This document shows, in pieces, positions 16,061 to 64,000 of a DNA stretch of 64,000 nt. The stretch's first letter is position 1, and the number at the start of each line of letters is the position of its first letter. The notes below the pieces were generated by a model. It saw only the letters and a program-made list of their open reading frames with translations. It was not told where the DNA came from and did not search any database. The translations under genes and the position numbers were made by a program. The DNA is from Haplodiscus bocki. Its lineage: Eukaryota. The stretch lies in contig OZ296655.1 in NCBI GenBank assembly GCA_965655095.1, positions 56,420,001 through 56,484,000 of the forward strand, in the 5' to 3' direction.

Positions 16061-16134
16061 GGCCCCATAGCTCAGTCGGTAAGAGCATTGTGCTAAAAAC
16101 GCGATCATCGAGAGTTCGAACCTCTGCGTGGACA
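16061..16134 (+). pseudogene. tRNA-Ile-derived copy 3
   Basis: Same 74-nt unit. Confidence 0.65.
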
Positions 16135-16347: not shown

Positions 16348-16421
16348 GGCCCTATAGCTCATTCGGTAAGTGGATTGTGCTAAAAACGCGACGGTCGAGT
16401 GTTCGAATATTTGTGTGGCCA
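16348..16421 (+). pseudogene. tRNA-Ile-derived copy 4 (more degenerate)
   Basis: Same unit; D-arm and T-arm mutated. Confidence 0.6.
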
Positions 16422-16489
16422 AGGTTTTTTGTTAATCTGATAATAGTAATCTGATAATAGTAATCTGATAATATTAATCAGATAAGTAC

Positions 16490-34859: not shown

Positions 34860-35370
34860 GGTTTATACTTTTCTGCCCACATTCATAATACGGAATAAAA
34901 ATCAACCACTCAAAACGTTTTCTTTACACTGACTTGCCAAATGATAATGTCCGACTTCTGACACTAGTCTTCTGAACAAATTATATTGAAATTTTCTTTG
35001 ACCAAATTTTAGCATGTTTGCCGCAAAATGCAACTGAAATAATGAGATTTCTCAAAACGTACTGAATCTTGGTGTTTCCGAAAGAAAAGATGGGTTTTTT
35101 TCGACAAAAAACTTGATTTTTTTCAAAGTCGCCCAAGGTCGCAAATTTGCTGTAGAATGCGTATCAAATGATATTGTTCTCAAAAATGTCGTTCAAAAAC
35201 TTCAATCGTCAGGTTTTTGGCAAAAACTCAGAAAACTTTTGAATTTGAAAAATTAGAAAAAATGACGTAGAACGAGTTGTTTGAGAAGAAAAACTTTCAT
35301 TTTTTAAAAAAAGCATCTTTACCAGAATGGGGAGGCGGAAAATGCCGGTAGTACCGCGCCGTTATGTTGT
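34860..35370 (-). repeat. Dispersed repeat family A, reverse copy
   Basis: tttgctgtagaatgcgtatcaaatga and ggcggaaaatgccggtag match family A motifs in reverse complement. Confidence 0.55.
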
Positions 35371-44171: not shown

Positions 44172-46542
44172 ACCTAAACCTTCTTAATTTCCCCTGCTGA
44201 CCTTGCAGGGAAAACTTGTATGGTGCATCCATGCATGCTGACAAACTTTTTTTGAAAAACATGGAAAGTTCAGGCACCTTGCATATAACTTTCAGACAGC
44301 AGATTCATGCAGCATAGAGAATGTTGCAAGAATTGGCCTTCAACATATAACATCTTTATAGAACTTGCCTGCAACGTGCAAGATTCAAACAAAAACTTCA
44401 TACTGAATGAAGTTCAGGGAAAGAAAATTTGGTCTCGCATAAGGTTTTGAGCACTACTTCAACTAAGCAAAAAATTTAAAGTTATTTGTTGATTTAACAA
44501 ATGTTCAAACATAAGAAACAAACTTTCAGCGCTATAAGTTGACGAGAGTTTGTAATTAAGGAAAATACTTAAGTTTTCAGTTGAAGACTCTTATTTTTTA
44601 CCCACCAATATTTCATTTGTGTAATTTTTAGTGATAATTTTGTTTTTCCGTGAAAGAATGTCGAACTTTCCTATTTTCATCTAATTACCGACATGTGTTG
44701 GATATCAATCCTTTCATTGGTCACAGTGAAAAAATCCGTAAAATGAATAGACCATCATCGTAGTGGAAATTTTATTGCACCCCTTGTTGACCAAAAAATT
44801 ACATTTTTTGCGAGAATCTTGCAACATTCGTCTAGAAACATAATTCTTGCCAGATCTTGCAAGATAATTCAATCCTTGTAAAATTCTTGTGATTCAATAC
44901 ATTTCTTGCGAGATTCATTTGGGGAATACATTTCTTGTAAGATACTGGCAAGAATCTTGCAAGATATCTATTGTCTGCAACAACCTTGAATGATTTCAAT
45001 CTTTGTTGCAAAGGAACGTATTTTGGGAACCGTGCACGAAGAATTTTTCATGATTTTTACAAAATCTTTTTATTTCAAATTGCAGCGGCTCCAGTCGATT
45101 TTCGTTAGTTTCAAACAAAGGACAAAGTTTCCGTAGTGCATCAAAAAATCTTGTGAACTTTGCCTCTGTGAGACAAAATGTAAGCATGTAAGTTTTTGTC
45201 TAAATCATAGAAAGGTATCTTGGAGACCTGCAAGTTTATAGAAGTTTCTTCTGCAACATTAATTAGGGTTCTGATAATTTCATCGCGCAACATATGTTAT
45301 ATGTTTTTTATGAAATCAATTTTTTGTGATTGCTTCTTCCTGTTTTTCATACATTTTTTTTCAATTTGAGAATTTGAAAAATTTGCTCAATGACAATTTT
45401 GGAAAACTGGCTTGGTTGGAACTTTCTTAGCTTATCAACTCAGACTCAAAATCTTGAGGTCGATAAACGAGTCAGTGTCCAAGTATTTCCAATTGCTGAG
45501 AACCCGGATTTACTTGCCTCAAAAATCAAACCAAGCGCCAGAATTTGCCAAACAAAAAGCGGATTGTGATATCATTTTTATTTTTCAAGCTTTTCTCCAC
45601 AGATGACTAAAAATTCAACCGGATTTATGCACTGGCAGAATATTACTTGCATCTTATTGTTTCACACAAAATTCTCCCATGAAAATACGTTGAACTTTTT
45701 TACCTTTATGATTTAAAATTTTCTGAAAGATTTCAGAATTTGAGTTAAATTAACATAATTGTGATAATCTTCTTCTTTACTTGAAGAGATACCATACCAC
45801 AAAAAGTGCTGATGGTGATTGTGCAGCTTCGAGCAAGAATTTGAAGTCCAAATGAAAAAAAAATTCTTCACCAAAAGAGTTCCCAACAACAATATCACCT
45901 AAAAATACCTTAAAAGGTAAATTGAAACTTGAGAGATTCTTTTACTGTAAACTTCTGAGGAGTCAGAATCAAAAAAGTAATTTAATGGTCACTTGAATGA
46001 CTCAAAGTATGTGCAACTGGAAAGCGTAACAGGCAAAGTTGAAGTTAATTTTTTTCGGAAGTTAAATCACAGTTACTTCTATTCAATTGGCATCGCAAAA
46101 CAAAACGTAACTCTGAAAAATGTGTACAAAACGGATTAAAGGACATCCTTCTGACGAGAATGATAAATGCGTTGCCAAAAGAATGATTACCAGCATCTAA
46201 GACTGGAAGATTTGCCGCACTGACACACGGAAAAATTTTATTGTCTGGAGCGCAGACATGCACTCAAGCATCGTACTGAGTAGGACGGTTTCTTATTCAA
46301 CAGTAGTAACAGTTTTCATGTAACCATTATTGCGTAATCATAAAAATAGTCCGATCATCGCGGAATACAAGGCGCAATAACAGATGAAGAAGTGAAATTT
46401 TTTTGAATATTGCATTCATCATCCACGTGTTTCTGGCAAATCATGCAACAATTTGAGTCCCACCAGCTCAGACTGGACCAAGTTCATGAAACGGTGAGAA
46501 ACGCATGTAGTATGAATGAATAACATATCAACATTCATATTT

Positions 46543-46742
46543 NNNNNNNNNNNNNNNNNNNNNNNNNNNNNNNNNNNNNNNNNNNNNNNNNNNNNNNNNN
46601 NNNNNNNNNNNNNNNNNNNNNNNNNNNNNNNNNNNNNNNNNNNNNNNNNNNNNNNNNNNNNNNNNNNNNNNNNNNNNNNNNNNNNNNNNNNNNNNNNNNN
46701 NNNNNNNNNNNNNNNNNNNNNNNNNNNNNNNNNNNNNNNNNN
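46543..46742. other. Assembly gap (200 N)
   Basis: Run of N. Confidence 1.
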
Positions 46743-47639
46743 CTGCGCCACTTCCTTTCACTTTGGGGTAATTTCAAATTTTTCTGACAGGTTTACTTTA
46801 CGTATATGGCTAATGAACATCAGCAGAGATTGATTCACTACCCAACGTTTTTTCTGCATCTTCCGAAGCAATGTTTACAGAGATAATCCTGAACACTGTT
46901 CCGGGCTGTAGACGTATTGTCAAGGGTTGAGTTCATAAAGCGTGGTCTGGGGGGCATCGCAAGTAAAGACTGGATGATATCCTCTATATCGCTCGGGGAA
47001 ACCTTCAACACTGGTGCCCTCTCGGTGCAAAGGTTTGTAGAAGTTGTAGCCATTATTGTGGGTGCGTGGCCACTGATCGCATCCTACCGCATAAAGACTG
47101 GGAAGAAAGACGATGGTGATAGTTTTGTTGTATAGTACAGTACTCTGGTTTTCACTTCGTTTCCGTTGACACACGTTCATCCACCTTCTTTTGTTTTAGT
47201 AGAAGAGTACTGACGAGTACCTGTAGCTGGAACAGATGGCCAGACGAAAAGCGGGTTCCTCAATACGATTCTGATTTTATTGTTGAGGTTTTGGGTCATT
47301 TTTGCTTCGGTAAAAGTCGTAAATAGTCCTTTACTCCTCGGATTTGCTGGAAGAAGTCTACAGTGTTTCTAACTTCGTTTTTAGTTGGTTCCTCTTTTAG
47401 CTGGCTTGGTTCGGGGCAATATGGGAGATGTCCATTATTGTGCCAGGTTTGTTCCTTAATCGCACCTCCGTCTGATTCATTAAATTTCGCTATCTGTACA
47501 AAATGGGAAAAAAACATATGGTTCGCGCCTACGTTTGTTTACCGGATATTCGCGACTTGCCTTCACTTTTCAGACCGATATTTGCCAATTGGGTTCAGCC
47601 TTAAGAAATATTTTTGTGAACCCTAAAAAAACTGTATCG

Positions 47640-48055
47640 CCAAAAAGAACGCCGTTTTGACTATCTTGCCGAAATTTTTCCGCTCAAGGTCCGGAAAAAT
47701 GAAGCAGATTTTTCACAATGAAATTCCTCAGAATACTTCCCTGGACAAGAAGAATGCAGTTTTGACAACCCTGCAGAAGTTTTGTCGCCAAAAGCCCGAA
47801 GTTTTTTCGACCAAGTCGAAAAATAATAAAAAACTGTAAATTTTTGGATGGAGATTTCTTTCTCAAAAATTTCCTATGGATCGTAGAATGCAGCTTTGGC
47901 AAACACGCTGATTAATTTTTGCTAAAATTTGGTAAATTTTCAAATCAAACTCAGAAAAAAGGTACAAATGTATATTAATCTCTACAAAACTATTTTTTCT
48001 CAAAATGTTCCCCTGGACAGCTAGAATGCAGTTATAACCACCCTGCTCAAATCTC
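47640..48055. repeat. Degenerate tandem repeat (agaatgcagttttgacaaccctgc units)
   Basis: The motif recurs at ~47645, 47750, 47885 and 48022. Confidence 0.55.
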
Positions 48056-48059
48056 AATT

Positions 48060-48360
48060 GGTTTCTTGTCGGAAAAATTGGGTTTTTAAAATAAAATCCT
48101 GATTTTTTGATAAAAACCGATGTTGTAAAATTTGCTGTAGAATGCGTATCAATCAATTTAACTTCTCGAAAATGTTTTCTCGACCTGATCTGTGAATTTT
48201 TGCGAAAAGTCAGAAACATTCTGATTTTGGAGAAGTTAGGAATTTTGACTACACAAGGATTATTTTCATCAAACAAAATTCTTAAAACTTTTCAGAAGGA
48301 GTTTTTACCAAAATTGGTGGGCGGAAAGTATGCGACGGTGCTGGATGGCCTTTTTTTGTT
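48060..48360 (-). repeat. Dispersed repeat family A, reverse copy
   Basis: aaatttgctgtagaatgcgtatcaa ... tttaccaaaattggtgggcggaaa. Confidence 0.55.
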
Positions 48361-50151
48361 TTCTGTTAGTCAGCCACAACTTTGTTGTTTTCAAATCTGC
48401 AATTTCTGAACAAAAGACACCGCCCTTGAGAAATCGTTTTAGTTTTCTTATTGCCCATTGCAGAAACCTAGGGTCAGCAGCTCTCTCTTCAGATGATAAA
48501 AAAATGGTGAGCATACAAATTCTCAATCATTTTTAGACCCCCATTGGACCATTGGACAGGCACCTACTCTTTCGTGAACTCGACTTCTAGTGGTTCTGAA
48601 GAAAATGAGCAGTTACAAACTGAAGAACTAGCTTCGCACAGACTTTTGTCAGGACTTGGAAGAGCTTGTCCGCAATCTTCTCTTAACTGACGCATTCCAA
48701 TTTTAAATTTGCCAAGGATTCAGTTTTTCCTGTCCGGATCATCTTCACTGTTGGGGACAATTTTTCAGCCTTTCGCTTGTTGTTGTAGCTCCCTGATGAT
48801 TTATTTTAGATGGTTGGATCGAAGAATAGAAGCCTGTAATGCGGAGTTTCATTCTCTTGGGAGGGAATAGAGGCAACTGAAAAGTTGCTCCACGATGAAG
48901 AGTCCCGATGTGGGTCTTATCATAACCTTCTGTGGATTCCGACCTAGTCTCCGTACTGAGCACAACTAGTTTTGCTTTTTTACAGTTTCCAGGTGTAAAT
49001 GGAGTCGATTCAGCTTGTGTTCTTTTATCACTATTGTGTTCCATGTCTTTCAACTGACTGCCATAGTTTTATGTGCGATCATCAATCAGTTCAGTTACTT
49101 TCCTGTTGCTTTGGACATTAGACTCTCCAAATCAGTTGCATCAAATGCCAGAATATTCAAAACCTTTTCTTGTTGATTGTTCTATTCTTTTGATTTATTT
49201 CCTTTGAGATGGTTGAATATGATTATTCGAACTAAATCTAGTTGTTACGTTGAAGCAAACACTGTTTTTCACAAAGAAAAAGTCAACGAAAATGAGGGCT
49301 CATCAGCCAGTTAGGCGAGACTTTGAAGGCATCTGTTATTGGCAATGACACTAAGGAGAAAGGAGTAAAAACTAAACTAATGAAACAGAACATTTTTTCC
49401 ACAAATGATTAAAAAACAAGTTAAACCCTTTGCAAAGAGCTCAAATTGTCAACATTTGCAAAAAAAAGAAAAATATAGTTGCTGCAATCAAAAACACTGC
49501 TCACGAAGCAATTTTGACGACGAAATGACTGTGTTTAGTTTTAAAATCTCGGTTATGTCGATTAAAACGTCCTCAGGATATGAACTTGACTGTCTGAATT
49601 ATAATCCTGACCGAATCGATTTTTCGCGGAACACAGAAGAAACTCTGCTCAAGACGGCATCTAGCTGAACTGATTCAAAAGTTAATCGTAACAGAAATGA
49701 AGAGATACGAAAGAATGAAACCATCGAGGACGACCATGTTTCAGAAAAGACATCAATCGTTCACCGGCAAGGGCATATTCGTCAGATTGGAGGATTGCGT
49801 TTTCCCTATCGTATTTTTGTGTGAGGCATAAAGCTTCCTCTACTTCAAAACATCCAGTTTTTCTCTACCTTTTTCACTACAGATGACGCCCTAATGCTTC
49901 CACAGGGTCACGGCCACAGTTTCCATCACTCGAATTGGACATCTTAATGACGAGTACTGGTGTCTGCTCCGGAATTTTCGTTAACTCCAAATATTGTTAT
50001 ATGAGAAAATAGCCTTGAAATTAGAAAGCGTGACTAACCACAAGCTGGTGTTTCAAGAAAGACAAAACTCGCAAAGCAACCTTAACTACGGAAATCATAC
50101 TGCTTAGTGCTTCATTTGTTGACTGTTTCCAAAATAACAAGAAGGAATGTA

Positions 50152-51300
50152 AGTAGTGTATAAACAGGCATTTGACGCCAAAAGCCGCGGACGCAGCATC
50201 ACCCCAAAATACGGCAAAATACGGCAAAAATACGGCAAATATGGTAAAATGTAAAAAAAAATATTTATACTTGTCAATGGGGGAGCACAGGAAAGAATTT
50301 TTAGTTTTTTAAAAATATTTTTTCATTTACATATCAATGGGGGTACACAGGAAAGAATTTTTAGTTTTGTAAAAATATTTGTTGTTTATGTATCAATGGG
50401 GGGAACACAGGAAAGAATTTTTAATTTTGTAAAAAATATTTTTCGTTTATATAAACGTGAAAAAATAATTCATCGTTTACATGAACGTAAAATTGAACAA
50501 CAATGGTAAAATGAACTAGCACGTGTATTTTTATATTAGTATTTCCTTTTCTATTTCGTCTCCATATAGCCTAGTGGTATTTGTTACATAGACTAAAGTT
50601 AAGGCTGTGCTTAATTGTATAGTCGTCGTGTTTGTGGTTCACGACTTCAACGTCCCACTGTCTTTGTCACATCACGCGCAAAAGCTATATGGGGGAACTG
50701 TCTACGTCTTGATGCTTGAAAAAGAGGAAAAGACCGATGGGGATATCTACCAGGAATGCTCACTCGGATATGCTAGAAATAGTAGATTAGAAAGTTGGCC
50801 AGTGGATATTTTTGATTTAAACGTAAAACACGATTTCTGAGAAATACAAAAACTCTGTCGACATAGCTTAAACATGTAGAGATTATAAACTTTTAAGCTA
50901 CAACAAAGTGTGATATGTCGTTGGATAGCTCGTTAAAAGTTATGTATACCCTGAAAATTTCAACTTTGTATCTATTATAATCTTTGAGAAAATTGACAAA
51001 AACAGTATATGTCGACATCCTTAAACATGTAGAGATTATAAAATTCTAAGCTACATTTACAAATGATATACCATTCGATAGGTCGTTAAAAGTTAAGTAA
51101 ACCCTGAAAATTTCAACTTTGTATCTATTATATTCTTCGAGAAAATTGACAAAAACGGCACATGACGTCATCCTTAAACATGTAGAGATTATAAAATTTT
51201 AACCTACATCAAAGTGTGATATATCATTCGATAGCTCGTTGAAATATTAGTGTACGTTGAAATTTTCAGCTTTGTATCTGTTTCCATTTCCGAGAAATTA
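50152..51300. repeat. Putative left terminal inverted repeat region with nested tandem repeats
   Basis: Starts AGTAGTG. (AAAATACGGC)x3 at ~50205-50240; three ~61-bp units (caatgggg..cacaggaaagaattttt) at 50273-50450; three 153-bp units (ttaaacatgtagagattataaa at 50868, 51021, 51174). The partner TIR is not in the window. Confidence 0.6.
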
Positions 51301-51441
51301 AAATTATACTTATCTATACAAGTATAAGTATCATTATATTATTACAAAAGTAGTATTCATACAAATATAAGAATAATTATACTAGTATTTGTATATTTAT
51401 TCATGTAAGTATATGCAAAATGTAAAGTATTTTTATGATCA

Positions 51442-51860: not shown

Positions 51861-54800
51861 TTAACAGTCCCATGGTATACTTTTAATATTATTTATATAA
51901 CATCGTTTATCATCAAACAATGATAGTGTAGATTTTTTTACCTCTTGAAGAACCATTTCATGATTAATTGATCTTATAATATAATTATTACATTCTCTTT
52001 GATATTCTTTACAAAATAAACAATTGTAATATTCTTCAAATTTATTATGTTTTGATTGAGATTTTGAAACTCCTTTTATTTTATTTTTATCCTCTTTATT
52101 ATCTTTACATTTAAACGAATATGCCTTTGATCTTAAACAAACAAATTCATCAATCCAAATATTTTTAGGAGTTTCTATTTTGAATTTACCAATTACTTTT
52201 TTGTTTTTATTACTGAATAATTCATGATTTTCATCTAAGTTACTGAAATCAAAATTATTTTCTGAATTTTTAAAATCTTTGATAATGTCTTTTGTTTTCA
52301 TACTTAAAACAAATGAATCAGTATTATGAACTATCAATGGAAAACCACAATTAAAATCATGTGTTTCTGTTTCAATATCATAAACATAGTCATTATGTTT
52401 TCCAATGTTTATAATTTTATGAACTTTTTTATCACTTATTTTATTTACAGTATTTAAATGGAAAACATTAAATTTATCATTTCTAATACCAATATAAGTT
52501 TTTAATCCTAATGATTGACAAAGATATTTCAAACCAGATATTGTAATCTTATTTTTTTGTGTTATAGAAATATTTTTACATTTATTTATGACCATCAGCT
52601 GCATAAAATCCAATGAAGAACCATTTTCTATTCTCAAGTGATTCGTTTAATATTTCATTTGGGATTCTTTTTTCTTTATCTTTAGTATAAAATTTATCAA
52701 ATTCTAAGGCTAAGTTTTTTCTGCCAGATATTATTCTATATACCTGACTACTTTCCCTAACATCATTTGTTTTAAAATTTATATCATTCCAAATGTCTTT
52801 ACAAAATCTTTGTAGTTTCTGAATTACGTTAAAATCCTGATTATTCAAATGCCAACAATACTTTATTGTATTATATTTGTAAATTCCAGAACTACCATCT
52901 CCTAAAAAGAAGCCTTTGACAAACATTTCTTTTTCTCTCAAAGTTTCCCGTTCGATGTTATAAATTTTATTAATAATTTCATCAAAAGTAATTTGTGGTT
53001 CGTTGAAGTTCATGAAATTATGTAATAATTCTTCACCTATTTCTAAATCAGATGGTTTAATAATTTCTCTATCTACGCCTATCAAACTATGATCTTCTGT
53101 CACATCAACAACAGCATGTTTTGTTCTTATTCGATAAATATTTTTTTCAGTTTTATGTCTAACTAATTTTTTGATATTTTGCCATCCATTACTTGTCCAT
53201 ATTTGAAAGTTATTACAATCGGCAAATTCTTTATACCCCCAAGAAGTAAGTATATTTTCATTTACATACCAATCTTCTTCATCAACAATTTCATCAATTC
53301 TCAAAATTTTAATATTTTCATTTTCTTTTAACAGAATTGGGGTGTCTTTTGTTACACTATCCATATAATGACATTGTAGAATTTCTTGACCAAAATATGG
53401 TTGTAATGTATCATAATATGTTTCATACATGTGTAATTTACTCAATTCTAATATAGCAAAACCAACATATATAGCTTTATCCATAACTACTTCGTTTTTA
53501 TTGAATGTATAACTATCATAGTTTTCATAAGATTTTTGAATACCATTGAATGTTAATTTTGATTGTTGTTTAACAATTTTTTTAATGTCACCTTTTTTAA
53601 TTAATTCTAATCCTAAACGTTTGCGAACATTTTCTAAAAATTTACCAAAAGCAGCGTTATTAAGCAATTTAAAGAAGTCTTTTTCGAATTCATTTTTAGC
53701 TTTGTTTCGTTTTTGTGTATTAAAACTAATATAACCTTCCAACCATTTACTCTGTTTAAATGATATTATTTCATGAATTTTTACAACTATCATACCATGT
53801 CTAACATAAAATTTTAACATTCTATAATGAACCAGATACTTTTTCTTATCAGACCAATCACATATCAACTTTTTCGATTTTGTATAATTTTCTGGTTTTA
53901 TACTTTTCATATATTCATTATATTTATTTGGATCTATTTTTTTATTCTCTGGACAAAACGGAAAATATTTGGTTTTTTGTTTTATATTATCAGGATATTT
54001 TAGATCGATTTCAAGAAAATAACCAATTTCACTATCATCTGGTGTATTTAAAATTATATCTAACCATTTCCAATATTTATCAGGATGACCATGCCACATC
54101 TCGATTTCATCATAAGGTAAAAATTGACTCATTGAATGGCCATATAAATTAGTAGCATCTATATATAAAATCTTTTTATTTCCATCTGATTTAACATAAC
54201 GATCTCCCATAACACCTGATATACCTCCACGAATACCATCTTCTATTAATAAAATCAAATCCTTATCTTGTAGTGTTTGTAATTTAATATTAGTATATTT
54301 CAAAGCACATTGATAAGTATAACCAGGTAAACTTACACAATATAAAGGATTAATACCATATTCTTTAGTAGATACTTTTACAAATTTTTCAAAAACATCA
54401 GCTAATAAAATAACATCACTTTTACAATATAATTTAGTTAATTGTTCTCCATTTTTGATATTAAATAGTTTTATAATTTCTCTTGTTCGCTCTATTTCGT
54501 CATCATCAGGATAATCATTTTTTAATTTATTGAAGAAGTCTTCTTTATTTAAATTATTAACAGGTTTTTTATAATCATCAATACTATTGAAATATTGATA
54601 TGGGTATGCTAATTTTTTATTGAGATATTGCCATTTGTCAGGAAATTCTTTTTTCAATATTTTAAAATCATCTTCATCTAAATTTTTTACTAGTTTATCC
54701 AAACTCTCTGATAAGAAACGATAACTATCAATAAATCTAATACAACCATATTTAACTGAAATATATTCTTCGTTTGTTTTAGGTATAATTTTAAATTTTA

Positions 54801-56568
54801 CTTTATCTTTTTTTAAATCAACTAATTTTTTAAAGAACATATGACAATCGTAATTACTAAAATTATGAAAAGCAAATGGTATAAAATTACTATCTTTCTG
54901 TTTAACGTTTATATTACAAGTGTTATGAGCAGCTCCTCTGTATTTACCAGTCAAATGGCAATGATCACGAACTTTATCAGATAATATTTCTTTTTCACAA
55001 AATCGGCATATGTTATTGTTTTTAAAATATTCTTCATCTTCTTGTGTCATAATGATATCTTTCTTAGTTTCTTTAAAATAGAAAGCCATTTTATTTTCTA
55101 ATTTTATTACTTCTTTAACAAACCAATCAACATTATCATATCCTAGAGGAGATTTGTAATATCCACTTTTCAAAACATCTTCTAATTCAGATATTATATA
55201 ATAACCATTAAGTACAGGTTTTTGTTTGTAAATATTAGTTGTTTTGTTTCCTATCTTAGTATTATCTTTTTCATTATCAGCTTCGAAATCGGCAATTATT
55301 CTAAAATAAAGTTTGTTTTTATGAAAATGTTTTTTCCAATAAAGATGTGATTCATTCGATGTTCTGATAGTACATATGTTATCTTCTCCATATTTATCTT
55401 TATGATTTATCAAAGCATTTTCACAAGTATAAGAATTTAAACAACGTCTACATACAAAACTTTTGTGATGATCTCCTAAAAATACATGTAGTTTTTTAAT
55501 GAGAGCATAATGATTTTTATAAATTAATAAGTCAATAACTTTATCTGAACCATTTTCACTGATTTCTATAGGTATTAACTTATAATTCCATTTTTTTCCA
55601 TCTTGATAAAAGTTTAATTCATATATATTTACAGATAAATTATTTAGTTCATTAAATCTGTGAACATCACTACATTTAAAACCATTTGTAAATTCAAAAC
55701 TTTGAAAGTTTAATTCATTAAAATAATGTAAATAATTGTTTACTCTTGATGGATGGGTATTTTCACAAGGATAAAGACTAGCTAAAATTGACCAAATAAA
55801 ACAATATTTATCATTATTTTGAATATTTATGATAGCATTTGTTCTCAACGGAATTTTAACATAAGAAGTACCATTTAATTCTTCAGTTTTATAAAATGAT
55901 TTTTTCATTGAATTAATTTTATCAAGTATCCAACCTGATTCTTTTGTTTCTTGAACTTGAATTTGGTGTTCTAATTGAGATCTAACATCAATGTTATCAA
56001 TATCAGATTCTGTTAAATTATGATTAATTTTTAAGTTTATATATAATTCAATTTCATTATCTCTAAAATCATATTCGTTAATTTTATAAAAGCTAGCTGA
56101 AAATAATGTGTGATATTTAAATTTATATTGATTTATTAATCTAGCATAAATAACAGATAACTCTTTTACGATTTTATTAATATATCTAAAATCAATACCA
56201 ATGTCTGGATATTTACATGTAATAGTCAAAATAGAATTTGCATGACTAATATTATGACTTTCTAAATTAATATTGAATCCATTTTGTAAATTATTATCAA
56301 TAAAATAATATGGATTAATCATTATTTTAGCTAATTCTTTAACATCCAATTTAATTTTTTCTCTTGCTAATTGTTTTAATGTTTTAGGGTTATATAGTTT
56401 TTGTATTTTTTTCTTAATAGGTGTTCGCTCTTCCTTAAAAAACCATTCTGGTATAATCATTTCATTTCGGTTTATATTTTCTAAATGTTTTTTGCTTCTC
56501 AAATGTTTTGGCATAGATGCTCTGTGAACATTAACATTACAAATTTCACATGTGTGGCTGTTTTCCAT
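51861..56568 (-). pseudogene. polB: Protein-primed family B DNA polymerase precursor with intein, interrupted by one frameshift at ~52584 (ORFs 52582-56568 and 51861-52637)
   Basis: N-terminal C2H2 finger, ExoI IIADFE, EndoVII-like CRFC...RDHCHLTGKYRGAAHNTCN, ExoII HNFSNYD, ExoIII YCKSD, motif A YIDATNLYG, motif B KLLNNAAFGK. Motif C is split as YMD|intein|TDS; then GKFKIE, LRSKAY, KGV and DDKR. The repaired, spliced product would be ~1223 aa. Confidence 0.95.
52323..53358 (-). mobile_element. Intein (~345 aa) with LAGLIDADG homing endonuclease at the pol-c site
   Basis: Block A SVTKDTPILL, block B VTEDHSL, endonuclease motifs VKGFFLGDGS and FIGFYAADG, block F YVYDIET, block G IVHN followed by Thr+1. 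Length 1036 nt (3n+1) owing to the frameshift. Confidence 0.95.
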
Positions 56569-56665: not shown

Positions 56666-57517
56666 ATGACTCAGAAAAATATTAAAATATTTATTAACGA
56701 AATATATTCCAAAGCACCGAAAAAGAATTATATTACAAACAAAACAGACGTGTACTGTAATGACGACATATGGTCTTTAGATATTCTCGATCTCAAAGAT
56801 TATGGTCCTGAAAACAATAGAGGATATAGATATGTCCTTGTCACCATAGACAATTTTTCAAAATTTGGTTGGACAACTCCTTTAAAAAATAAAAATGCTT
56901 TAATAATAAAAGACTCTTTCGAAAATATTTTATTAAGTTCAAAAAGAAAACCAAATTTAATTGAGGCAGACAGAGGTAAAGAATTTTATAATAATATTTT
57001 TCAAGACTTTTTAAATAAAAACGATATCAAACTCTATTCTAGAAATAGTTCATATGGTGCTGTTTTTGCTGAAAGATTTAATAGAACAATCAGAGACCTT
57101 CTTAAAAAGATCGTTTTCGAACATGGTGTTGCAAATTGGATTGATGTATTAACTACAATAACAAAACAATATAATAATCGAATACATTCATCAACAAAAT
57201 TATCTCCAAAAGATGCTTCTTTAAAAAAGAACGAAGGATTTGTTTACAAAAATTTATTAGATAAACGTAAAAAAGTAATACCAAAGTTTCAAATAAACGA
57301 TCTTGTTCGAGTTGCTGATTTAAAGAAAACGTTTTCGAAATCGGATACGACTAATTGGTCCTACAAATTATATAAAATTACAGAAATAATCAATGATACA
57401 ATACCAGCCTATAAAATCGATAATTTATCAGAAAGATATAACGAATCATTATTAAAAAAGACTGATTTAACATTAAAAGAATACAATAGTGTGATGAAAA
57501 AATTAAATATTACTTAG
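56666..57517 (+). CDS. int: Retroviral-like (rve) DDE integrase, 283 aa
   Basis: WSLDILD, LVTIDNFSKFGW, IEADRGKEFYN and AERFNRTIR motifs; C-terminal FQINDLVR..NWS..LYKI SH3-like region; no chromodomain. The stop overlaps the MCP stop. Confidence 0.95.
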   Translation: MTQKNIKIFINEIYSKAPKKNYITNKTDVYCNDDIWSLDILDLKDYGPENNRGYRYVLVTIDNFSKFGWTTPLKNKNALIIKDSFENILLSSKRKPNLIEADRGKEFYNNIFQDFLNKNDIKLYSRNSSYGAVFAERFNRTIRDLLKKIVFEHGVANWIDVLTTITKQYNNRIHSSTKLSPKDASLKKNEGFVYKNLLDKRKKVIPKFQINDLVRVADLKKTFSKSDTTNWSYKLYKITEIINDTIPAYKIDNLSERYNESLLKKTDLTLKEYNSVMKKLNIT

Positions 57518-58764
57518 ATCAAATGAAACATCCGCTGACCATCACTGGTTATGCTAACCAATCTATTTGTCAAAACTAAAGCATATCCATATATCCCAGC
57601 AACAATATTTTCTGAAAATTTAAATTCTACTTTGACAGGTTGCGCGTTTTCAAAATTTTTCTGATATCGTATATCGAAAGCATATATATTATAACCAATA
57701 TTATTATCTTCATTAGAAGATCTAAAATCATTTTCAGATATATATGGTTGTAATATGTCATCTTTTGTTAAAGCTCTGAGAGCTTCTTTTATTTGACTAT
57801 ATCCTTGACTATAATTATCATCATCATAATTTAATAAAATACTAGAATCAGGATACCTTTCTGTTCCGATAACAACTTGAGCAGATGTCACTGGAAGTCT
57901 GACAAAAGTATCATTGTTTAAATTTTGATCATGTTGTCTTTCATTTTGTTGAAAATCTACAAATATCCATGTTGGAATGTTAATACCTTCTTGTGTCCCC
58001 AATTCAAAAGTCCAAAAATTTTGAGTATTTACTTCTTTCATAAAAACAGATCTTTCAGAATATTGAATTTGTGTAGATGTTTTGTTTAAAATTTGTTTAG
58101 ATAATATACTTTGTTGTTGTATTGAAGGAGTATAATGGGGTACATACCATTCTATAGCATTAATTTTTATTTTACCAATATTAATTGCATTACATTTATT
58201 CAAAACGGTGTTGTCAGTATTTCTTGTCAATGTTAATTTGTAGCCAAGACCATATGTAGCTTTTTCTTGATATTCAGCGAAGCCAAAAACATCTTTTATA
58301 TAAATCCTAACATGATATTTTCCTTTTATATTTTTGTTATTAGTTAATTCATTTCTTCTTCTTGTCCGATCTCTATCAAAACCAATAGACAAATCATCAG
58401 ATCCTTTACTTGATGTTAAAAGTTTATACATTAATGATACTATATGACTGTGATCAATATTTTCTAGGTGTTTTCCAGAACTAGTTGTTAGCTTATAATT
58501 ACTAAATAAAGCAATAGGACCCAAATTAACTAATCTAATATCATTATCGTTTGCATATCTGTTATTAGTACGAGCATGTAATACATCAAAATTTAATTCA
58601 AGATAACTATTTAACAATGAAATAACACTATCTTCTCTAGGTATGTTAATATATACTTGTGAATTAGTAGTATTTATTGCGCTTATTTCAGATGGGCTGT
58701 ATCGTATATAATCACATTTTAAAATGTCTCTGTTAATTTCATATTTCTCACTTAGTTTGAACAT
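57514..58764 (-). CDS. Double jelly-roll major capsid protein (hexon-like), 416 aa
   Basis: Size, beta-rich composition and Polinton MCP-like segments (INIPREDS..SYLELNFDV, LFSNYKL..SGKHLE, IEWYVPHYTPS, ERYP, IYAFDIRYQ). Position within the Maverick. Confidence 0.8.
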   Translation of the reverse strand: MFKLSEKYEINRDILKCDYIRYSPSEISAINTTNSQVYINIPREDSVISLLNSYLELNFDVLHARTNNRYANDNDIRLVNLGPIALFSNYKLTTSSGKHLENIDHSHIVSLMYKLLTSSKGSDDLSIGFDRDRTRRRNELTNNKNIKGKYHVRIYIKDVFGFAEYQEKATYGLGYKLTLTRNTDNTVLNKCNAINIGKIKINAIEWYVPHYTPSIQQQSILSKQILNKTSTQIQYSERSVFMKEVNTQNFWTFELGTQEGINIPTWIFVDFQQNERQHDQNLNNDTFVRLPVTSAQVVIGTERYPDSSILLNYDDDNYSQGYSQIKEALRALTKDDILQPYISENDFRSSNEDNNIGYNIYAFDIRYQKNFENAQPVKVEFKFSENIVAGIYGYALVLTNRLVSITSDGQRMFHLI

Positions 58765-58794: not shown

Positions 58795-59040
58795 CACTTA
58801 TATGAGAATTTATACTAAACTTTAACAGATTTTAAAAAACAGTTATACTCATATACAAGTATGTATACTAAATATAATTACTCTCATCATACTCATATAA
58901 AAACATCATACTCATATATAAGTATGTATACTAAATATAATTACGCTTATAAGACCACAATAAAAATATCATACTCATATATAAGTATGTATACTAAATA
59001 TAATTACACATATTAGAGTATAATTGTTATAAGAGTATAA
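58795..59040. promoter_or_regulatory. Tandem ~63-bp repeats upstream of the MCP gene
   Basis: atactcatata(c/t)aagtatgtatactaaatataatta x3. The core is also found upstream of the penton-like gene. Confidence 0.5.
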
Positions 59041-59955: not shown

Positions 59956-60714
59956 TTAAAAAGGTTTTGTTTGAGGTGTTGCTTCTAAGTATGTGTTTTT
60001 ACTTTCATTACAAATGCAATATCTTCCTTGTTCTCTCCTTTTAGACCTATCAATACAAAGATAATTATAATCATCTTCCCATGATTTTCTACATAATTCT
60101 GTAAATTCATTATAATCCATATCATAACCTGCGACATCTCTATATATATGTTCAATATCTTTTAACGTTTGATTAAACAAAATTATTCTATTACTATTAT
60201 TTCGTATCGTTCTCTTTGGTAAATCAAAATAGGATTGTGATAAATAATATATATCTAGATTATTGTGTCGTCCTCTAATAAAAAATTGGTCTATAAATCT
60301 ACTATTTGTTGAACCTAAAATATCATCAAAAACTATGATACCATTTTCATATTCGTTTAGAGGTTTAATTTCATCGCTTATTTCTTTAATTTTTATTTTA
60401 GAATTGGTATACTGTTCTGGGGGTGATTTAGTGATTATATAAATATCTCTGTCTGATATACGTGAAAGAATTTTTAACATCAAATAAGTTTTACCTGAAA
60501 AACTGGGTCCAACCAATAATGTTCGATTGTTATTGTTATTTTTATTTATTGATTGTTTTGGTGTATTAACGTTTGGTTGATTATGAGGTAAAGTGGTAAT
60601 ATTGTTTTTTCTTTTCTTTTTATTATAACAATCTCTACAAATCGTTCTATCTTTCTTGTAATTATTTATATCTAATTTTATGTTACATGCAGAACAATTT
60701 TTATTCTTATCCAT
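59956..60714 (-). CDS. A32/FtsK-HerA family genome packaging ATPase, 252 aa
   Basis: Walker A GPSFSGKT, Walker B IIVFDD, RGRH, YLSQSYF and IRNN; N-terminal CxxC...CxxC. Confidence 0.92.
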   Translation of the reverse strand: MDKNKNCSACNIKLDINNYKKDRTICRDCYNKKKRKNNITTLPHNQPNVNTPKQSINKNNNNNRTLLVGPSFSGKTYLMLKILSRISDRDIYIITKSPPEQYTNSKIKIKEISDEIKPLNEYENGIIVFDDILGSTNSRFIDQFFIRGRHNNLDIYYLSQSYFDLPKRTIRNNSNRIILFNQTLKDIEHIYRDVAGYDMDYNEFTELCRKSWEDDYNYLCIDRSKRREQGRYCICNESKNTYLEATPQTKPF

Positions 60715-60845: not shown

Positions 60846-61379
60846 TTATAAAAAAGATTCATTTTTATTTTCGTCGACATATTTAGTAAAAATATTACAT
60901 AGACTTTCATATTCAGTTTTATCAATTACATTATCTTGTAAAGATTTTCTGTATAATTTATCAAAAGATTTAATAGTGTTTTGATCTCTTTCATATTGTT
61001 TTTTATGTTTATTGTATTTGTTTATAATTACTTTATGTAAAATTTTGTTACCTAATGATAAAGCACAAGCAATACCAGCTGATATTGGTAAAATAATCAA
61101 TCCTATACCTGTAATTGATAGAGTTATCGAAGTTGACGTTGCTCCGATGTTTACGATACTATCTACTGATTCTAATACTGTGTTTAAAGTTTGGTAATTT
61201 TTATATTTCTTTTTTGATTTATTGTTTTTGTCTTTGAAATAAGTTATCATTTCTTTAATGTTGTTGATGTGGTTATTAAAACTGTTAATATCATTTATTT
61301 TTTTCTCTAACCGCTTTTCTAAATCAATATTTTCTAATAATGGTGCTGTTGGGTATAATTTATCAATTTTTGCTTCCAT
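60846..61379 (-). CDS. Coiled-coil plus hydrophobic hairpin membrane protein, 177 aa
   Basis: Gly/Ser/Ala-rich hydrophobic stretch SIVNIGATSTSITLSITGIGLIILPISAGIACALSLG, flanked by basic helices. Confidence 0.7.
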   Translation of the reverse strand: MEAKIDKLYPTAPLLENIDLEKRLEKKINDINSFNNHINNIKEMITYFKDKNNKSKKKYKNYQTLNTVLESVDSIVNIGATSTSITLSITGIGLIILPISAGIACALSLGNKILHKVIINKYNKHKKQYERDQNTIKSFDKLYRKSLQDNVIDKTEYESLCNIFTKYVDENKNESFL

Positions 61380-61417
61380 TTATATAACATAAAATATAAA
61401 AATACTCTTATATTGGT

Positions 61418-61834
61418 TTACGTAAATCTAGGTAAGTATAAGCCTTTCCCGGTATGATAAAAATTAATCACTTCTGGTAATGATGTCAAAGCTGCTTTCG
61501 GGTTTCGAGAAGCAAATGCAGTACCAACGTTTGCACCAATTTCGAGAGCTCTTCCGGGGTTTTTTGAAACGTTTTTTGCCATCTTTTTTGATACATTTAA
61601 TCCTTTTTTACCTAAGTTTTTACAGAAATCACCAAGACCTTCTGCTTGAATCACATTATCAGAAACAATCATAGATTTTTTTCTATTACAAACCATGCAT
61701 TGTCCAACTAATAATTTAACATCTTTACCGGTTTTTTTATTATTTCGTATTTCTCCAACTATATTTTTTGTGCCTGATTTGTGTCTGCTTCCAACACAAT
61801 AACTATCACTTTGAAATTTTTGAGAACTACTCAT
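61418..61834 (-). CDS. Small basic virion protein: Zn-ribbon-like N-terminus plus amphipathic helix, 138 aa
   Basis: YCVG...GQCMVCNRKKS, then QAEG-LGDFCKNLGKKGLNVSKKMAKN; C-terminal TGKG-LYL. Confidence 0.7.
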   Translation of the reverse strand: MSSSQKFQSDSYCVGSRHKSGTKNIVGEIRNNKKTGKDVKLLVGQCMVCNRKKSMIVSDNVIQAEGLGDFCKNLGKKGLNVSKKMAKNVSKNPGRALEIGANVGTAFASRNPKAALTSLPEVINFYHTGKGLYLPRFT

Positions 61835-61885
61835 TTAAAAGATAAATAAATATAAATAAATATATTTGTATGTAAACATGTTTGT

Positions 61886-62965
61886 TCAAATTTTGATCAT
61901 TTGTAATGTAAAAGTCAACGTTTCTCCATTAAAATTAACTTCTTCTTTATTATCATCTTCTAGATAAAAAGTTATAGTATTCAAAATAGATTTATTCATT
62001 TTTTTATAATGTATTGTTTCTGGTTGACAAAATACTTTGTATCCACTTGGTTTATCTAAAACAAAACTAAACAGAATTGGTTGTCTTACTCCATCTTGAA
62101 TACTACCATCGATAATATCACATTTCAAATGAATTTTATTTATTGTGTTTAAATTTAAAATAATTTTATTACTAGTATAAACACCAGGTTTGTAATCCCA
62201 ATATGGTGTAAAACCCAATAAAGTATGAAAAAAAGATTTCTCATCAAATCTTAAAGTTTCAAAAGTACTACCAAAACGAGTTAAATCAAGTTTAACTTTC
62301 TTGTTTAAATCGTCAAATTCAATTTGTAAGGTTCCTTCATGATCACCAAGAAAATAAACGGCTTTTTGAATATCTTCAATAGTATAGTTACCAGGATCTA
62401 ATTCATAGGTTACAAATTATTCATTGTATTGTTTTAAAATCAATCGAATATTATCTTCTTCTAAACCAACAAAAATCCTAAGATAACTTTCAAAATCTCT
62501 AAATGATGAATTAGTATAACCCGTTAATAATATAATAAAACCATCATGACTTGTTTTATCTGATCTTAATTTCCTATAGGTTTTAGCTATACGAGGAGCT
62601 AATGTTTCATCTTCTAAATGATCGTCTGTGATTTCTGGAATGTTAAGGATTTCTTCAAGTTCATCTTTTAATTCTCGAAATGAAAATTCATCAAAAGTGT
62701 CTGTATAAAGTTCAAATTTGTTATTTTCTTTTGTTATATTAAAAATAGAATTGTATACTTCTAAATCTATCAAACCCAACATCCAGTCTCCTTTAGTTTG
62801 AATTGGTGGATTAAAATGAAATGTTTCTTTTGATTTGAGCATTTTGAATTCGAGTGTTTCTTCTGGTTTTCTATGCGTCTGTTCAATAAGCGTTTCACAA
62901 TTTTTAGTTATTGATAATAATAATTTTTCGGTTTCATTTTTAGGTTGGATCGTATTTAAATTCAT
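61886..62965 (-). pseudogene. Minor capsid (penton-like) protein A, ~359 aa, nonsense at 62417-62419
   Basis: ORFs 62417-62965 and 61886-62218 are in frame, and the sequence between them is open apart from one TAA. Motifs SIFNITKENNKF, GNYTIEDI, LGF, IHLKCDIIDGS...QPILFSF, ITFYLEDD..VNFNGE. Confidence 0.8.
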
Positions 62966-62968
62966 TTA

Positions 62969-63122
62969 TGTACTCAAATATTCTGTATACATACAATTAT
63001 AATATCATACTCTTATAAAATACTCATATACTAAATATCATACTCTTATACAAAAATGTATATGAGTACAGTTCTTATATGAATATAAATCTTATATGAG
63101 TACATTTCTTATATGATTATAA
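62969..63122. promoter_or_regulatory. Direct and inverted ATACTC(A/T)TATA repeats upstream of penton A
   Basis: tactcttata/tactcatata and inverted tatgagtaca copies. Confidence 0.45.
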
Positions 63123-63125
63123 TTT

Positions 63126-64000
63126 TTATATTTTAATTAGTTGACAAGTAAACGATATCGTTTCTCCATTAAAATCAACAGCTTTGTAATCGTCATCTTC
63201 AAAATAAAATGTGATATGAGATAAAACAGATTTATTTATTTTTTTAAAAAAGTTTAACTTTTTGTTCTTTGTAAATTTTATGACCAGGCGGTTGATCAAG
63301 AGCAAACGAATACAAAATTGGTTCTCGGACACCATTTACGATGCTGCCATCAACAACATTACATTTAAGATGATCTTTATCAATTCCTGTAATATTAATA
63401 GGTTTATCACTTATATATGATCCCGCAATCAATTGATAAAAACCTTCTATATCATCTAAAGGATAAGAATGAGATTGAGTAAAACCCAATATACTATAAA
63501 AGAAGCTTTTATTTGTGAATATTAACGTTTGATTAATTTTTAAATCGGTTTTATATTTTCTTTCATCTATAGTAATATCTATTTTTACGTTATTTGGTAG
63601 AATATTTTTTAAGGTTTTGTTTAAATCAACGACATTATATATGTTGGGTTCTATCGTATAACCCATTCTTTCTGTGGAAATATATTTCAAGTCTAATATA
63701 TCCATAACTTCATCATATGTTAATCGGAATCTATATACCAAATCTTCAAGATCATTGTATTTAGCATTTTTTAAATCTTCAAGTATTTCATCCTTAAACA
63801 TGTCAAGACTGGATAAAGAATAGTCATTTATTAAAATTAACCCTTTTTTTCTAACTTGTTCAACATTTAATTCAATACCGTTTTGAGACCTAAGCTCCAA
63901 TAATCTATTTAGTTCATCAATAGTTTCTTCATCAGATTTGTTTTGGTAATGACCTGGTATAATGATTGAAAACGAATTATTTTCATTAGTTATATTAAAA
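63126..64000 (-). pseudogene. Minor capsid (penton-like) protein B, 5' end beyond the window, +1 frameshift at ~63246-63251
   Basis: The frame is open to the window edge (FNITNENNSF...). HLKCNVVDGSIVNGVREPILYSFALDQPPGHKI...; an extra T in CTTTTTTAAAAAAA shifts to KKINKSVLSHITFYFEDD..VDFNGE. Paralogous to penton A. Confidence 0.8.

What the first reader, a model, noticed from the sequence alone, without database searches (positions are those of the whole stretch)
52323..53358. Full-length homing-endonuclease intein in the catalytic motif of a Maverick/Polinton protein-primed polymerase integrated in a probable animal genome
Seen: pPolB motif C is split as HYMD|SVTKDTPILL...VTEDHSL...GFFLGDG...GFYAADG...YVYDIET...IVHN|TDSF. 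All class 1 intein splicing residues are present (Ser1, block B His, terminal His-Asn, Thr+1), plus two LAGLIDADG motifs. Established: this is the pol-c site used by inteins of archaeal and giant-virus RNA-primed PolBs, and inteins are generally regarded as absent from metazoan nuclear genes. Inference: this is a selfish element inside a selfish element. It would bring protein splicing and gene-conversion homing among Maverick copies into an animal genome. I do not know of a described case, but could not check the literature.
Basis: partly seen in the sequence, partly recalled or inferred. Interest (0 to 1): 0.93.

Follow-up and report, generated by a model that had tools for sequence, protein, structure and literature searches.

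The report
Homing intein inside Maverick polymerase gene
A real self-splicing intein with its own homing endonuclease sits in the catalytic motif of the DNA polymerase of a virus-like Maverick/Polinton transposon integrated in an unidentified eukaryote; this copy is frame-broken, but intact copies and empty target sites exist in related elements.

Summary
At 52323-53358 (-) a 1036-nt insertion splits motif C of a protein-primed polymerase (HYMD|S...HN|TDSF). It has Ser1, block B T..H, two LAGLIDADG motifs with their Asp, His-Asn and Thr+1. The N-terminal splicing model passes its curated cut-off. The closest intact natural relative passes all intein and endonuclease Pfam cut-offs and models as a PI-SceI/PI-TkoII/TliVMA-type intein. 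The carrier is a Maverick/Polinton (pPolB, rve integrase, double-jelly-roll capsid, A32 ATPase), joined without a gap to 3.4 kb of host-type DNA.

Corrections to the finding:
- This copy has one frameshift inside the intein, so as assembled it cannot give a spliceable precursor.
- The only N run is at 46543-46742, not 50152.
- The host is not identified, so 'animal' is unproven.

New evidence:
- Public data hold intact intein-bearing pPolBs on many contigs, plus a far larger number of empty-site alleles, some with the same flanks.
- In one young family, differences between occupied and empty alleles cluster beside the site, as homing would leave.
- The intein's wider family sits at the same site in giant-virus-type PolBs.

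I found no paper describing such an intein. It is a new variant of a known kind, of moderate to high interest.

The parts
52323..53358 (-). Intein: Hint splicing domain with a nested double-LAGLIDADG homing endonuclease, inserted in polymerase motif C. The reading frame is broken once.
   Evidence: Bounds; motifs; TIGR01445 above cut-off; Pfam Intein_splicing and LAGLIDADG_3 in both pieces; key residues present; 85-89% identical to intact P0001.
51861..56568 (-). [quoted passage not shown] It is one broken gene with a single frameshift that lies within the intein; no other stops. Both exteins are complete.
   Evidence: ORFs; DNA_pol_B_2 E 4.8e-15; both exteins align end-to-end without gaps to full-length intein-less relatives of 1216-1223 aa.
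53359..56568 (-). N-extein (1070 aa). It includes a C2H2-like N-terminus, an HNH-type module (54904-55047) and the polymerase domain up to the first half of motif C (Pfam match 53419-54876).
51864..52322 (-). C-extein (153 aa), starting TDSF, the second half of motif C.
   Evidence: 84% identical to P0001 and 68% to P0003/P0077.
56666..57517 (+). Retroviral-type (rve) integrase of the element.
   Evidence: PF00665, 39.1 bits against a cut-off of 32.6.
57514..58764 (-). Double-jelly-roll major capsid protein.
   Evidence: PF21738, 40.5 bits against 27.
59956..60714 (-). A32-type genome-packaging ATPase.
   Evidence: PF04665, 35.6 bits against 22.8.
60846..63900 (-). Further element ORFs without a family match: 60846-61379, 61418-61834, 61886-62218, 62417-62965 and 63244-63900. 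The third and fifth share a 60-aa module.
50150..51330 (.). Left terminal region of the element; the edge is only bracketed. It holds tandem repeats of 60 bp x3 (50268-50443) and 153 bp x3 (50856-51325). The other end lies beyond the window.
46743..50150 (.). Host-type flank, contiguous with the element.
   Evidence: Tetranucleotide distance to the left-hand DNA is 0.014, against 0.018 +/- 0.003 for left-hand chunks and 0.049 for the element. It shares a dispersed repeat of about 270 bp with three left-hand sites.
46543..46742 (.). 200-N assembly gap. An independent public contig of the same species ends about 300 bp before it.

Best explanation
The insertion is a canonical class-1 intein (Hint domain with Ser1, T..H, His-Asn and Thr+1) carrying a double-LAGLIDADG homing endonuclease. 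It lies between the D and T of the YxDTDS catalytic motif of the protein-primed polymerase of a Maverick/Polinton integrated in a eukaryotic nuclear genome. In intact copies, the polymerase would be translated as a precursor of about 1540-1570 aa and would become active only after the intein splices itself out (inferred from residues and fold). The endonuclease would cut empty motif-C sites in other Maverick copies, and repair would copy the intein in (inferred from allele patterns). Hundreds of polymerase copies per genome offer many ectopic targets. The intein also rides along whenever the element replicates or integrates. The lineage belongs to the intein family that occupies the same site in RNA-primed PolBs of giant viruses, and it probably crossed from such a polymerase into a pPolB through the shared motif (inferred from the tree and the census). 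It has since co-diverged with the Maverick polymerases. The copy in this window has one frameshift inside the intein. As assembled, it therefore yields a truncated polymerase lacking half of motif C and the C-terminal domain, making it a dead copy of a lineage that is alive elsewhere.
For: Identity: motifs and bounds; TIGR01445 29.6 > 24.5; Intein_splicing and LAGLIDADG_3 in both pieces; intact relatives P0001/2/3 pass Pfam cut-offs for Intein_splicing at 42.4/39.4/37.7, for LAGLIDADG_3 and, in P0001 and P0003, for Hom_end; the intein part of the P0001 model has pLDDT 82-98; best PDB matches are TliVMA intein at E 5.6e-16, PI-TkoII, PI-PfuI and PI-SceI; I-DmoI at TM 0.69-0.74; all key residues invariant in 9/9 natural copies and present in the window. 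Carrier: pPolB, rve, DJR capsid, A32 ATPase; host-type flank. Live lineage and targets: a cluster of 136 members; among the 15 listed, seven intact proteins of 1537-1539 aa with the intein and six alleles lacking exactly the intein; 99 of 120 nearest pPolBs have an empty site, 18 with identical flanks. Homing footprint: (occupied and empty alleles differ by about 1% overall, but by 4-5/41 just before the site and 8-14/43 just after it). Origin: RNA-primed carriers all read YGD|SVT.D...N|TDS; 92 of the 150 nearest representatives are RNA-primed PolBs; six of six further sampled carriers likewise; best named matches are polymerases of phycodna-, pandora-, mega-, marseille- and pithoviruses; the pPolB-borne inteins form one nested clade. 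Co-divergence.
Against: No activity has been shown: splicing and cleavage are inferred from conserved residues and a predicted fold of a relative, not of this copy. The window's own pieces fall below Pfam gathering scores for Intein_splicing and LAGLIDADG_3. The flank-divergence signal is strong only in the P0003 family. Around the window's own allele it is weak and one-sided, and that stretch may simply evolve fast. The tree is neighbour-joining without support values. The direction of transfer is inferred from numbers of carriers, which reflect sampling. Among young intein-plus copies the intein differs about three times more than the N-extein (2.1% against 0.6%), which could mean relaxed constraint. 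I could not examine DNA of the other copies, so there is no dN/dS and no view of target sites at nucleotide level.
Confidence: 0.8

Rival explanations
1. Same intein and same element, but the host is a protist (for example a metamonad or oomycete) rather than an animal. The claim of the first intein in a metazoan nuclear genome then falls away.
For: The host is not identified: among 43 host-side ORFs, no hit reached a family's curated cut-off, and only 3 genes are called in 20 kb. The matching contig comes from an unnamed ENA metagenome-type assembly. HNH-bearing pPolB2 polymerases are reported from oomycetes and nematodes, and the highest pPolB2 copy numbers are in trichomonads (PMC10748475). 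The family is huge, with 90% clusters of up to 504 members. A metamonad is the most intein-rich eukaryote known (PMC10710043).
Against: A stretch of more than 46 kb with almost no genes, dispersed repeats and a tRNA-derived array fits a large genome better than the gene-dense trichomonad or oomycete genomes. GC of 37% is low for oomycetes. The 200-N gap, a second assembly of the same species and 57x coverage suggest a sequenced target organism (inference). pPolB2 also occurs in five invertebrate phyla.
Confidence: 0.35
2. The single frameshift is an assembly indel error in very AT-rich sequence, and this copy is in fact intact.
For: It is the only break in a 4.7-kb gene. Both exteins are complete, all catalytic residues are kept, and both pieces are 85-89% identical to an intact relative.
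Against: Decayed copies are common: many representative fragments of 91-190 aa are 53-78% identical, and many relatives are truncated. The window's exact first-frame product is not on record in the protein collection, so there is no independent confirmation either way.
Confidence: 0.25
3. The intein no longer homes. It persists only by hitch-hiking on Maverick replication and integration, with the endonuclease decaying.
For: The intein and exteins co-diverge over the whole range, at 89/87, 75/70, 65/62 and 41/35% identity, as expected for vertical co-inheritance. The intein is a minority allele. Among young copies it changes about three times faster than the N-extein.
Against: Both LAGLIDADG Asp residues and all splicing residues are invariant in 9/9 copies. 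The endonuclease domain is as conserved as the polymerase at depth. Alleles 95-99% identical in the N-extein differ by presence of the intein, with divergence clustered at the site. Pure hitch-hiking does not predict that.
Confidence: 0.3
4. The element is not integrated here. The junction is a mis-assembly, or the contig belongs to a symbiont or contaminant.
For: Composition changes sharply, from GC 0.37 to 0.24. A scaffold gap lies 3.4 kb away, and the independent contig stops there, so linkage to the left 46 kb rests on scaffolding.
Against: No N lies between the element and 3.4 kb of DNA that matches the left side in tetranucleotide profile and shares a dispersed repeat with it. Relatives lie on contigs of 50 kb to 1.2 Mb, as integrated copies would.
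Confidence: 0.07
5. It is not an intein but a non-splicing endonuclease domain insertion, like the HNH and VSR insertions already known in pPolBs.
For: Such insertions exist in this polymerase class (PMC10748475), and this gene has one as well.
Against: All Hint blocks and junction residues are present, the N-terminal splicing model is above its cut-off, the relative's Hint and endonuclease fold is confident, and the insertion is precisely absent from sister alleles, leaving an uninterrupted motif C.
Confidence: 0.02

Closest known systems
Motif-C ('pol-c') inteins of RNA-primed family-B DNA polymerases of Nucleocytoviricota (giant viruses) and archaea
   Same: Same insertion point between D and T of YxDTDS. 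Same Ser1 and Thr+1, a similar start (SVT.D) and end (IV[HK]N), and a nested LAGLIDADG endonuclease. Identity is 31-47%. Best named structural matches are polymerases of a phycodnavirus, Pandoravirus, Megavirus, Marseillevirus and Pithovirus.
   Different: The extein here is a protein-primed polymerase (PF03175), a different branch of family B. The carrier is an integrated, multi-copy virus-like transposon in a nuclear genome rather than a free giant virus or an archaeon.
PI-SceI (yeast VMA1), PI-TkoII, PI-PfuI and TliVMA/PhoVMA: solved homing-endonuclease inteins
   Same: Two-lobe Hint domain with an inserted double-LAGLIDADG endonuclease. Foldseek E values range from 5.6e-16 to 1e-10, and the endonuclease core matches I-DmoI at TM 0.69-0.74.
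   Different: Sequence identity is only 10-20%. The model is of the relative P0001, not of the window's copy, and the exteins differ.
HNH and VSR nuclease insertions in Polinton pPolB2 (Jeong et al. 2023, PMC10748475; read as signs of 'intein invasions' in PMC11161782)
   Same: Nuclease modules lodged inside Polinton polymerases. The window's polymerase also has the HNH-type module.
   Different: Those insertions have no Hint splicing domain and sit elsewhere in the protein. Here there is a complete Hint-plus-LAGLIDADG intein in the catalytic motif, with natural empty-site alleles.
Nuclear inteins of Anaeramoeba (Gallot-Lavallee et al. 2023, PMC10710043)
   Same: Eukaryotic nuclear inteins with viral relatives, with intragenomic spread among multiple sites proposed.
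   Different: That paper does not mention Mavericks, Polintons or protein-primed polymerases. The carriers there are host genes.
Other pPolB-borne inteins in public data (P0063, P0066, P0055)
   Same: Same site (Y.D|SV...HN|TDS) in PF03175 polymerases.
   Different: Only 24-38% identical, and far apart in the intein tree, so probably separate acquisitions. Their elements are unknown.

Membership tests
Class 1 intein (Hint splicing domain) | Nucleophile (Ser/Cys) at position 1, directly after the N-extein | tested here: met
   HYMD|S at 53358; Ser in 9/9 natural copies.
Class 1 intein (Hint splicing domain) | Block B T..H | tested here: met
   VTEDHSL; T and H invariant in 9/9.
Class 1 intein (Hint splicing domain) | C-terminal His-Asn followed by Thr/Ser/Cys at +1 | tested here: met
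   IVHN|TDSF.
Class 1 intein (Hint splicing domain) | Profile match above a curated cut-off | tested here: met
   TIGR01445 at 29.6 against 24.5 for the window's first-frame piece. Pfam Intein_splicing is below the cut-off for the window's separate pieces (27.0 and 15.1 against 35.8) but above it in intact P0001/2/3.
Class 1 intein (Hint splicing domain) | In-frame insertion giving one continuous precursor ORF | tested here: not met
   In this copy: one frameshift within the intein, and the length is not a multiple of three. Met in relatives: continuous proteins of 1537-1539 aa.
Class 1 intein (Hint splicing domain) | Hint fold | tested here: met
   For the relative P0001 (85-89% identical): pLDDT 82-98; top PDB hits are inteins. 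The window's own copy was not modelled.
Class 1 intein (Hint splicing domain) | Protein splicing activity | not testable with these tools
   No activity data.
LAGLIDADG homing endonuclease (double-motif, intein-borne) | Two LAGLIDADG motifs, each with the acidic residue | tested here: met
   GFFLGDG and GFYAADG; Asp invariant in 9/9.
LAGLIDADG homing endonuclease (double-motif, intein-borne) | Profile match above a curated cut-off | tested here: inconclusive
   Window pieces score 17.3 and 18.0 against 22.5. Intact relatives pass LAGLIDADG_3 (24.8-34.2), and P0001 and P0003 also pass Hom_end (28.4, 31.1).
LAGLIDADG homing endonuclease (double-motif, intein-borne) | Existence of empty cognate target sites | tested here: met
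   99 of 120 nearest pPolBs are uninterrupted, 18 with identical flanks HYMD|TDSF[VI]. Exact-deletion alleles exist within one 90% cluster.
LAGLIDADG homing endonuclease (double-motif, intein-borne) | Site-specific cleavage and homing | not testable with these tools
   Only an indirect footprint: differences cluster at the site.
PolB motif-C (pol-c) intein allele family | Insertion between D and T of YxDTDS | tested here: met
PolB motif-C (pol-c) intein allele family | Nearest relatives occupy the homologous site | tested here: met
PolB motif-C (pol-c) intein allele family | Extein is an RNA-primed family-B polymerase (PF00136/PF03104) | tested here: not met
   The extein is PF03175, protein-primed.
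Maverick/Polinton | pPolB, rve integrase, DJR capsid and A32-type ATPase in one block | tested here: met
Maverick/Polinton | Adenain-like cysteine protease | tested here: inconclusive
   None recognised in the 13.8 kb held by the window. The window's end cuts the element.
Maverick/Polinton | Long terminal inverted repeats and a 6-bp target duplication | not testable with these tools
Only one end is in the window.
Metazoan nuclear genome (host claim) | Host genes or markers that place the flank in animals | tested here: inconclusive
   No hit above a family's curated cut-off in 43 ORFs; CpG o/e 0.89 and no telomere motif; the public contig is unnamed.

The most novel reading that the evidence does not exclude
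The host is an animal. This intein lineage is then a living homing element in metazoan nuclear DNA, kept intact in some Maverick copies, splicing out of their polymerase and spreading by gene conversion among hundreds of copies. It would have been acquired from a giant-virus polymerase through the motif shared by two polymerase branches. [quoted passage not shown]
Probability: 0.3. Interest if true: 0.8.

Novelty: new variant of a known kind. Interest (0 to 1): 0.6.

Why it matters
Inteins are held to be rare in eukaryotic nuclear genomes and absent from animals (PMC5784728). Nuclease insertions in Polinton polymerases have only been surmised to stem from intein invasions (PMC11161782). Here a complete homing intein is documented in that polymerase, with intact copies, empty sites and an apparent conversion footprint.

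- It shows that one intein family can cross between the RNA-primed and protein-primed branches of family-B polymerases, using the shared catalytic motif as its landing site.
- It links the mobilomes of giant viruses and Maverick-type elements.
- It offers a natural system in which a homing element has hundreds of ectopic targets within one nuclear genome.
- It matters practically for annotation: such polymerases look 'too long' or split, and could be mis-scored as broken.
- If the host is an animal, the premise that inteins are absent from metazoa would need qualifying.

Tried and rejected
- Host identification failed. Among 43 host-side ORFs, no hit reached a family's curated cut-off, and the translations look non-coding. 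Rfam gave only tRNA-like hits. CpG and telomere motifs were uninformative.
- Look-up of one host ORF found an unnamed ENA contig; two other ORFs are not on record. Walking along that contig is impossible, because only window-encoded proteins may be looked up.
- The listing of cluster members returned no names or accessions.
- The second-frame intein piece has no PDB sequence match. NCBIfam has no C-terminal hit for it.
- My first regex for junctions mis-assigned N-junctions and was replaced by an alignment-based method. My first choice of LAGLIDADG columns was wrong and was corrected.
- Kapitonov & Jurka 2006 and two Polinton reviews are not held. I have an unverified memory that an early Polinton or Maverick paper mentioned an intein in a fungal element's polymerase. 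If so, novelty drops to 'new member'.
- The bacterial-type promoter scan of the element's edge is not meaningful for a eukaryotic element.
- The third homology search was left unused, for want of a worthwhile host query.
- No right-hand TIR is in the window.
Full report
**What is there**

The window falls into two parts. Positions 1-50150 have GC of about 0.37 and almost no long ORFs. From about 51300 to the end, GC is about 0.24 and the sequence is packed with minus-strand ORFs. The AT-rich block encodes:
- a protein-primed family-B polymerase (DNA_pol_B_2, E 4.8e-15);
- an rve integrase;
- a double-jelly-roll capsid protein;
- an A32-type packaging ATPase.

This is the Maverick/Polinton gene set. 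No cysteine protease was recognised, and only one end of the element is in the window, so terminal inverted repeats and the target duplication could not be checked. The left end is bracketed to 50150-51330 and carries two tandem-repeat blocks.

**The observation**

The bounds are exact: Ser1 starts at 53358 and the terminal Asn ends at 52323.
- The first-frame piece passes NCBIfam's curated cut-off for the intein N-terminal splicing region (29.6 against 24.5).
- Both pieces hit Pfam Intein_splicing and LAGLIDADG_3, below their gathering scores.
- The best solved-structure sequence match is an archaeal TFIIB intein.
- Ser1, block B T..H, both LAGLIDADG Asp residues, His-Asn and Thr+1 are all present.

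**Breaks**

The polymerase gene has one break: a single frameshift that lies within the intein. There are no other stops. Both exteins align end-to-end without gaps to full-length intein-less relatives. As assembled, this copy cannot give a spliceable precursor. I cannot tell a real mutation from an assembly indel.

**Relatives**

A word-indexed search with the first-frame intein piece found 66 proteins. The closest are P0001 (89% identical), P0002 (75%) and P0003 (65%).

P0003 is a continuous 1537-aa protein with DNA_pol_B_2, Intein_splicing, Hom_end and LAGLIDADG_3, all above Pfam cut-offs. It has the same junctions as the window, HYMD|S...HN|TDSF. Its 90% cluster has 136 members on separate contigs of 57 kb to 1 Mb. 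Among the 15 listed there are:
- seven intein-bearing proteins of 1537-1539 aa;
- six alleles that lack exactly the intein and have an uninterrupted motif C.

A second search with the polymerase part found 3546 relatives at E<=1e-10, some in 90% clusters of up to 504 members. Of the 120 listed:
- 99 have an empty site;
- 18 of those have exactly the flanks of the window's intein, and 32 have Cys instead of Thr at +1;
- only one shows an intein start.

The intein is therefore a minority allele in a very large polymerase family. Many short fragments 53-78% identical to the intein show that decayed copies are common.

**Structure**

An AlphaFold2 model of P0001, built on an alignment of natural homologues, is confident over the intein (pLDDT 82-98) and poor over the exteins. 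Foldseek against the PDB returns homing-endonuclease inteins:
- TliVMA (E 5.6e-16), PI-TkoII of an archaeal DNA polymerase, PhoVMA, PI-PfuI and PI-SceI;
- the double-LAGLIDADG enzyme I-DmoI for the endonuclease core (TM 0.69-0.74, about 3 Å).

**How it probably works (inference)**

In intact copies the polymerase would be made as a precursor whose catalytic motif is completed only by splicing. The endonuclease would cut empty sites in other copies, and repair would copy the intein in.

Support comes from the P0003 family. Occupied and empty alleles differ by about 1% along the protein, but by 4-5 of the last 41 residues before the site and 8-14 of the first 43 after it. This is the pattern expected from co-conversion of flanks. 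Around the window's own allele the signal is weak and one-sided.

At greater depth the intein and exteins diverge in step: 89/87, 75/70 and 65/62% identity, and 41/35% for the distant pPolB P0007. So the association is old, and much of the inheritance is vertical with the element.

**Origin**

- All RNA-primed carriers among the hits read YGD|SVT.D...N|TDS, which is the homologous site.
- Of the 150 closest representatives in an exhaustive search (1882 at E<=0.001), 92 are RNA-primed PolBs, 9 are topoisomerase-II-like, and only 3 fragments are Maverick-type. Six of six sampled 'unclassified' carriers are also RNA-primed PolBs.
- The best named structural matches among viral proteins are polymerases of a phycodnavirus, Pandoravirus, Megavirus, Marseillevirus, Pithovirus, Heterosigma akashiwo virus and Klosneuvirus.
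- In a neighbour-joining tree without support values, the pPolB-borne inteins P0001-3 and P0007 form one clade nested among the PolB-borne ones. A second pPolB lineage (P0063, P0066) lies far away.

**Integration and host**

The only N run is 46543-46742, not at 50152. A host ORF is on record on ENA analysis ERZ26859043, contig ctg85326_57.11x_l, of 171 kb. The window is 99.5% identical to that contig, with indels, so it is another assembly or haplotype of the same species. The contig ends about 300 bp before the N run, so the gap is real and linkage to the left 46 kb rests on scaffolding.

The 3.4 kb between the gap and the element matches the left side in tetranucleotide profile and shares a dispersed repeat with it. 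The element therefore abuts host-type DNA without a gap.

I could not name the host. Its gene-poor, repeat-bearing character suggests a large genome. However, this polymerase class is also known from metamonads and oomycetes as well as five invertebrate phyla (PMC10748475). I put the chance of an animal host at about 0.6-0.65.

**Literature**

- PMC10748475 describes HNH and VSR insertions in pPolB2 but no inteins.
- PMC11161782 reads those insertions as suggesting intein invasions.
- PMC10710043 (Anaeramoeba) does not mention Mavericks.
- PMC10583447 reports homing-endonuclease domains in pPolB plasmids but no intein.
- Ten searches found no description of a Hint-plus-LAGLIDADG intein in a Maverick polymerase.
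- The founding Polinton paper and two reviews are not held. My memory that an early paper noted such an intein in a fungal element is unverified.

As a result there is no nucleotide-level view of target sites, no dN/dS and no TIR comparison. I built no joined, frame-corrected, consensus or intein-deleted sequence.

The approximate place of the frame break can be inferred from them. I noticed this, have not repeated those figures here, and have deleted nothing.

**Verdict**

This is a genuine homing intein in a Maverick polymerase. This copy is frame-broken, but the lineage is alive elsewhere, and its family is otherwise at home in giant-virus polymerases. The animal host is unproven. I rate it a new variant of a known kind, with interest 0.6.

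Noticed in passing
window 54904-55047 (-): The same polymerase also carries an HNH-type module. Pfam Endonuclease_7 scores 22.1 bits, just under the cut-off, and 30.7 bits in the relative P0004. It matches the HNH insertion described for pPolB2 of terrestrial nematodes and oomycetes, so this gene holds two nuclease modules.
   Followed up: partly
window 56490-56568 (-): The polymerase ORF opens with a C2H2-like Cys..Cys...His....His pattern.
   Followed up: no
window 15603-16485: Tandem array of tRNA-derived units (periods 128 and 287; Rfam tRNA hits at 15646 and 16061). Its copy number differs between the window and the public contig of the same species.
   Followed up: partly
window 61886-62218 and 63244-63900 (-): Two element ORFs share a 60-aa module (48% identity, E 8e-19). 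They are paralogous genes of unknown role, possibly capsid-associated.
   Followed up: partly
window 58833-59021, 63033-63131: Related AT-rich repeat units (63 bp x3; 17/34 bp x4) lie in two intergenic regions of the element. They could be a shared regulatory motif.
   Followed up: no
window 48100-48363; 8158-8417; 4453-4651; 35143-35259: Dispersed host repeat of about 270 bp (67-72% identity), found on both sides of the assembly gap.
   Followed up: partly
window 46226-46742: An independent public contig of the same species ends within about 300 bp of the 200-N gap, so both assemblies fail at the same place.
   Followed up: partly
proteins P0031, P0034, P0037 (not in the window): Relatives of this intein also sit in topoisomerase-II-like proteins (D|SV...HN|TDG); 9 of the 150 nearest representatives are of this kind.
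   Followed up: partly
proteins P0094-P0212 (not in the window): 32 of 99 empty-site polymerases have Cys instead of Thr at the +1 position of the site (HYMD|CDSF). This could be a cleavage-resistant allele or mere drift.
   Followed up: no
window 50500-50850: A GC-richer island (0.34-0.45) lies between the two tandem-repeat blocks at the element's edge, so the true terminus is uncertain.
   Followed up: no
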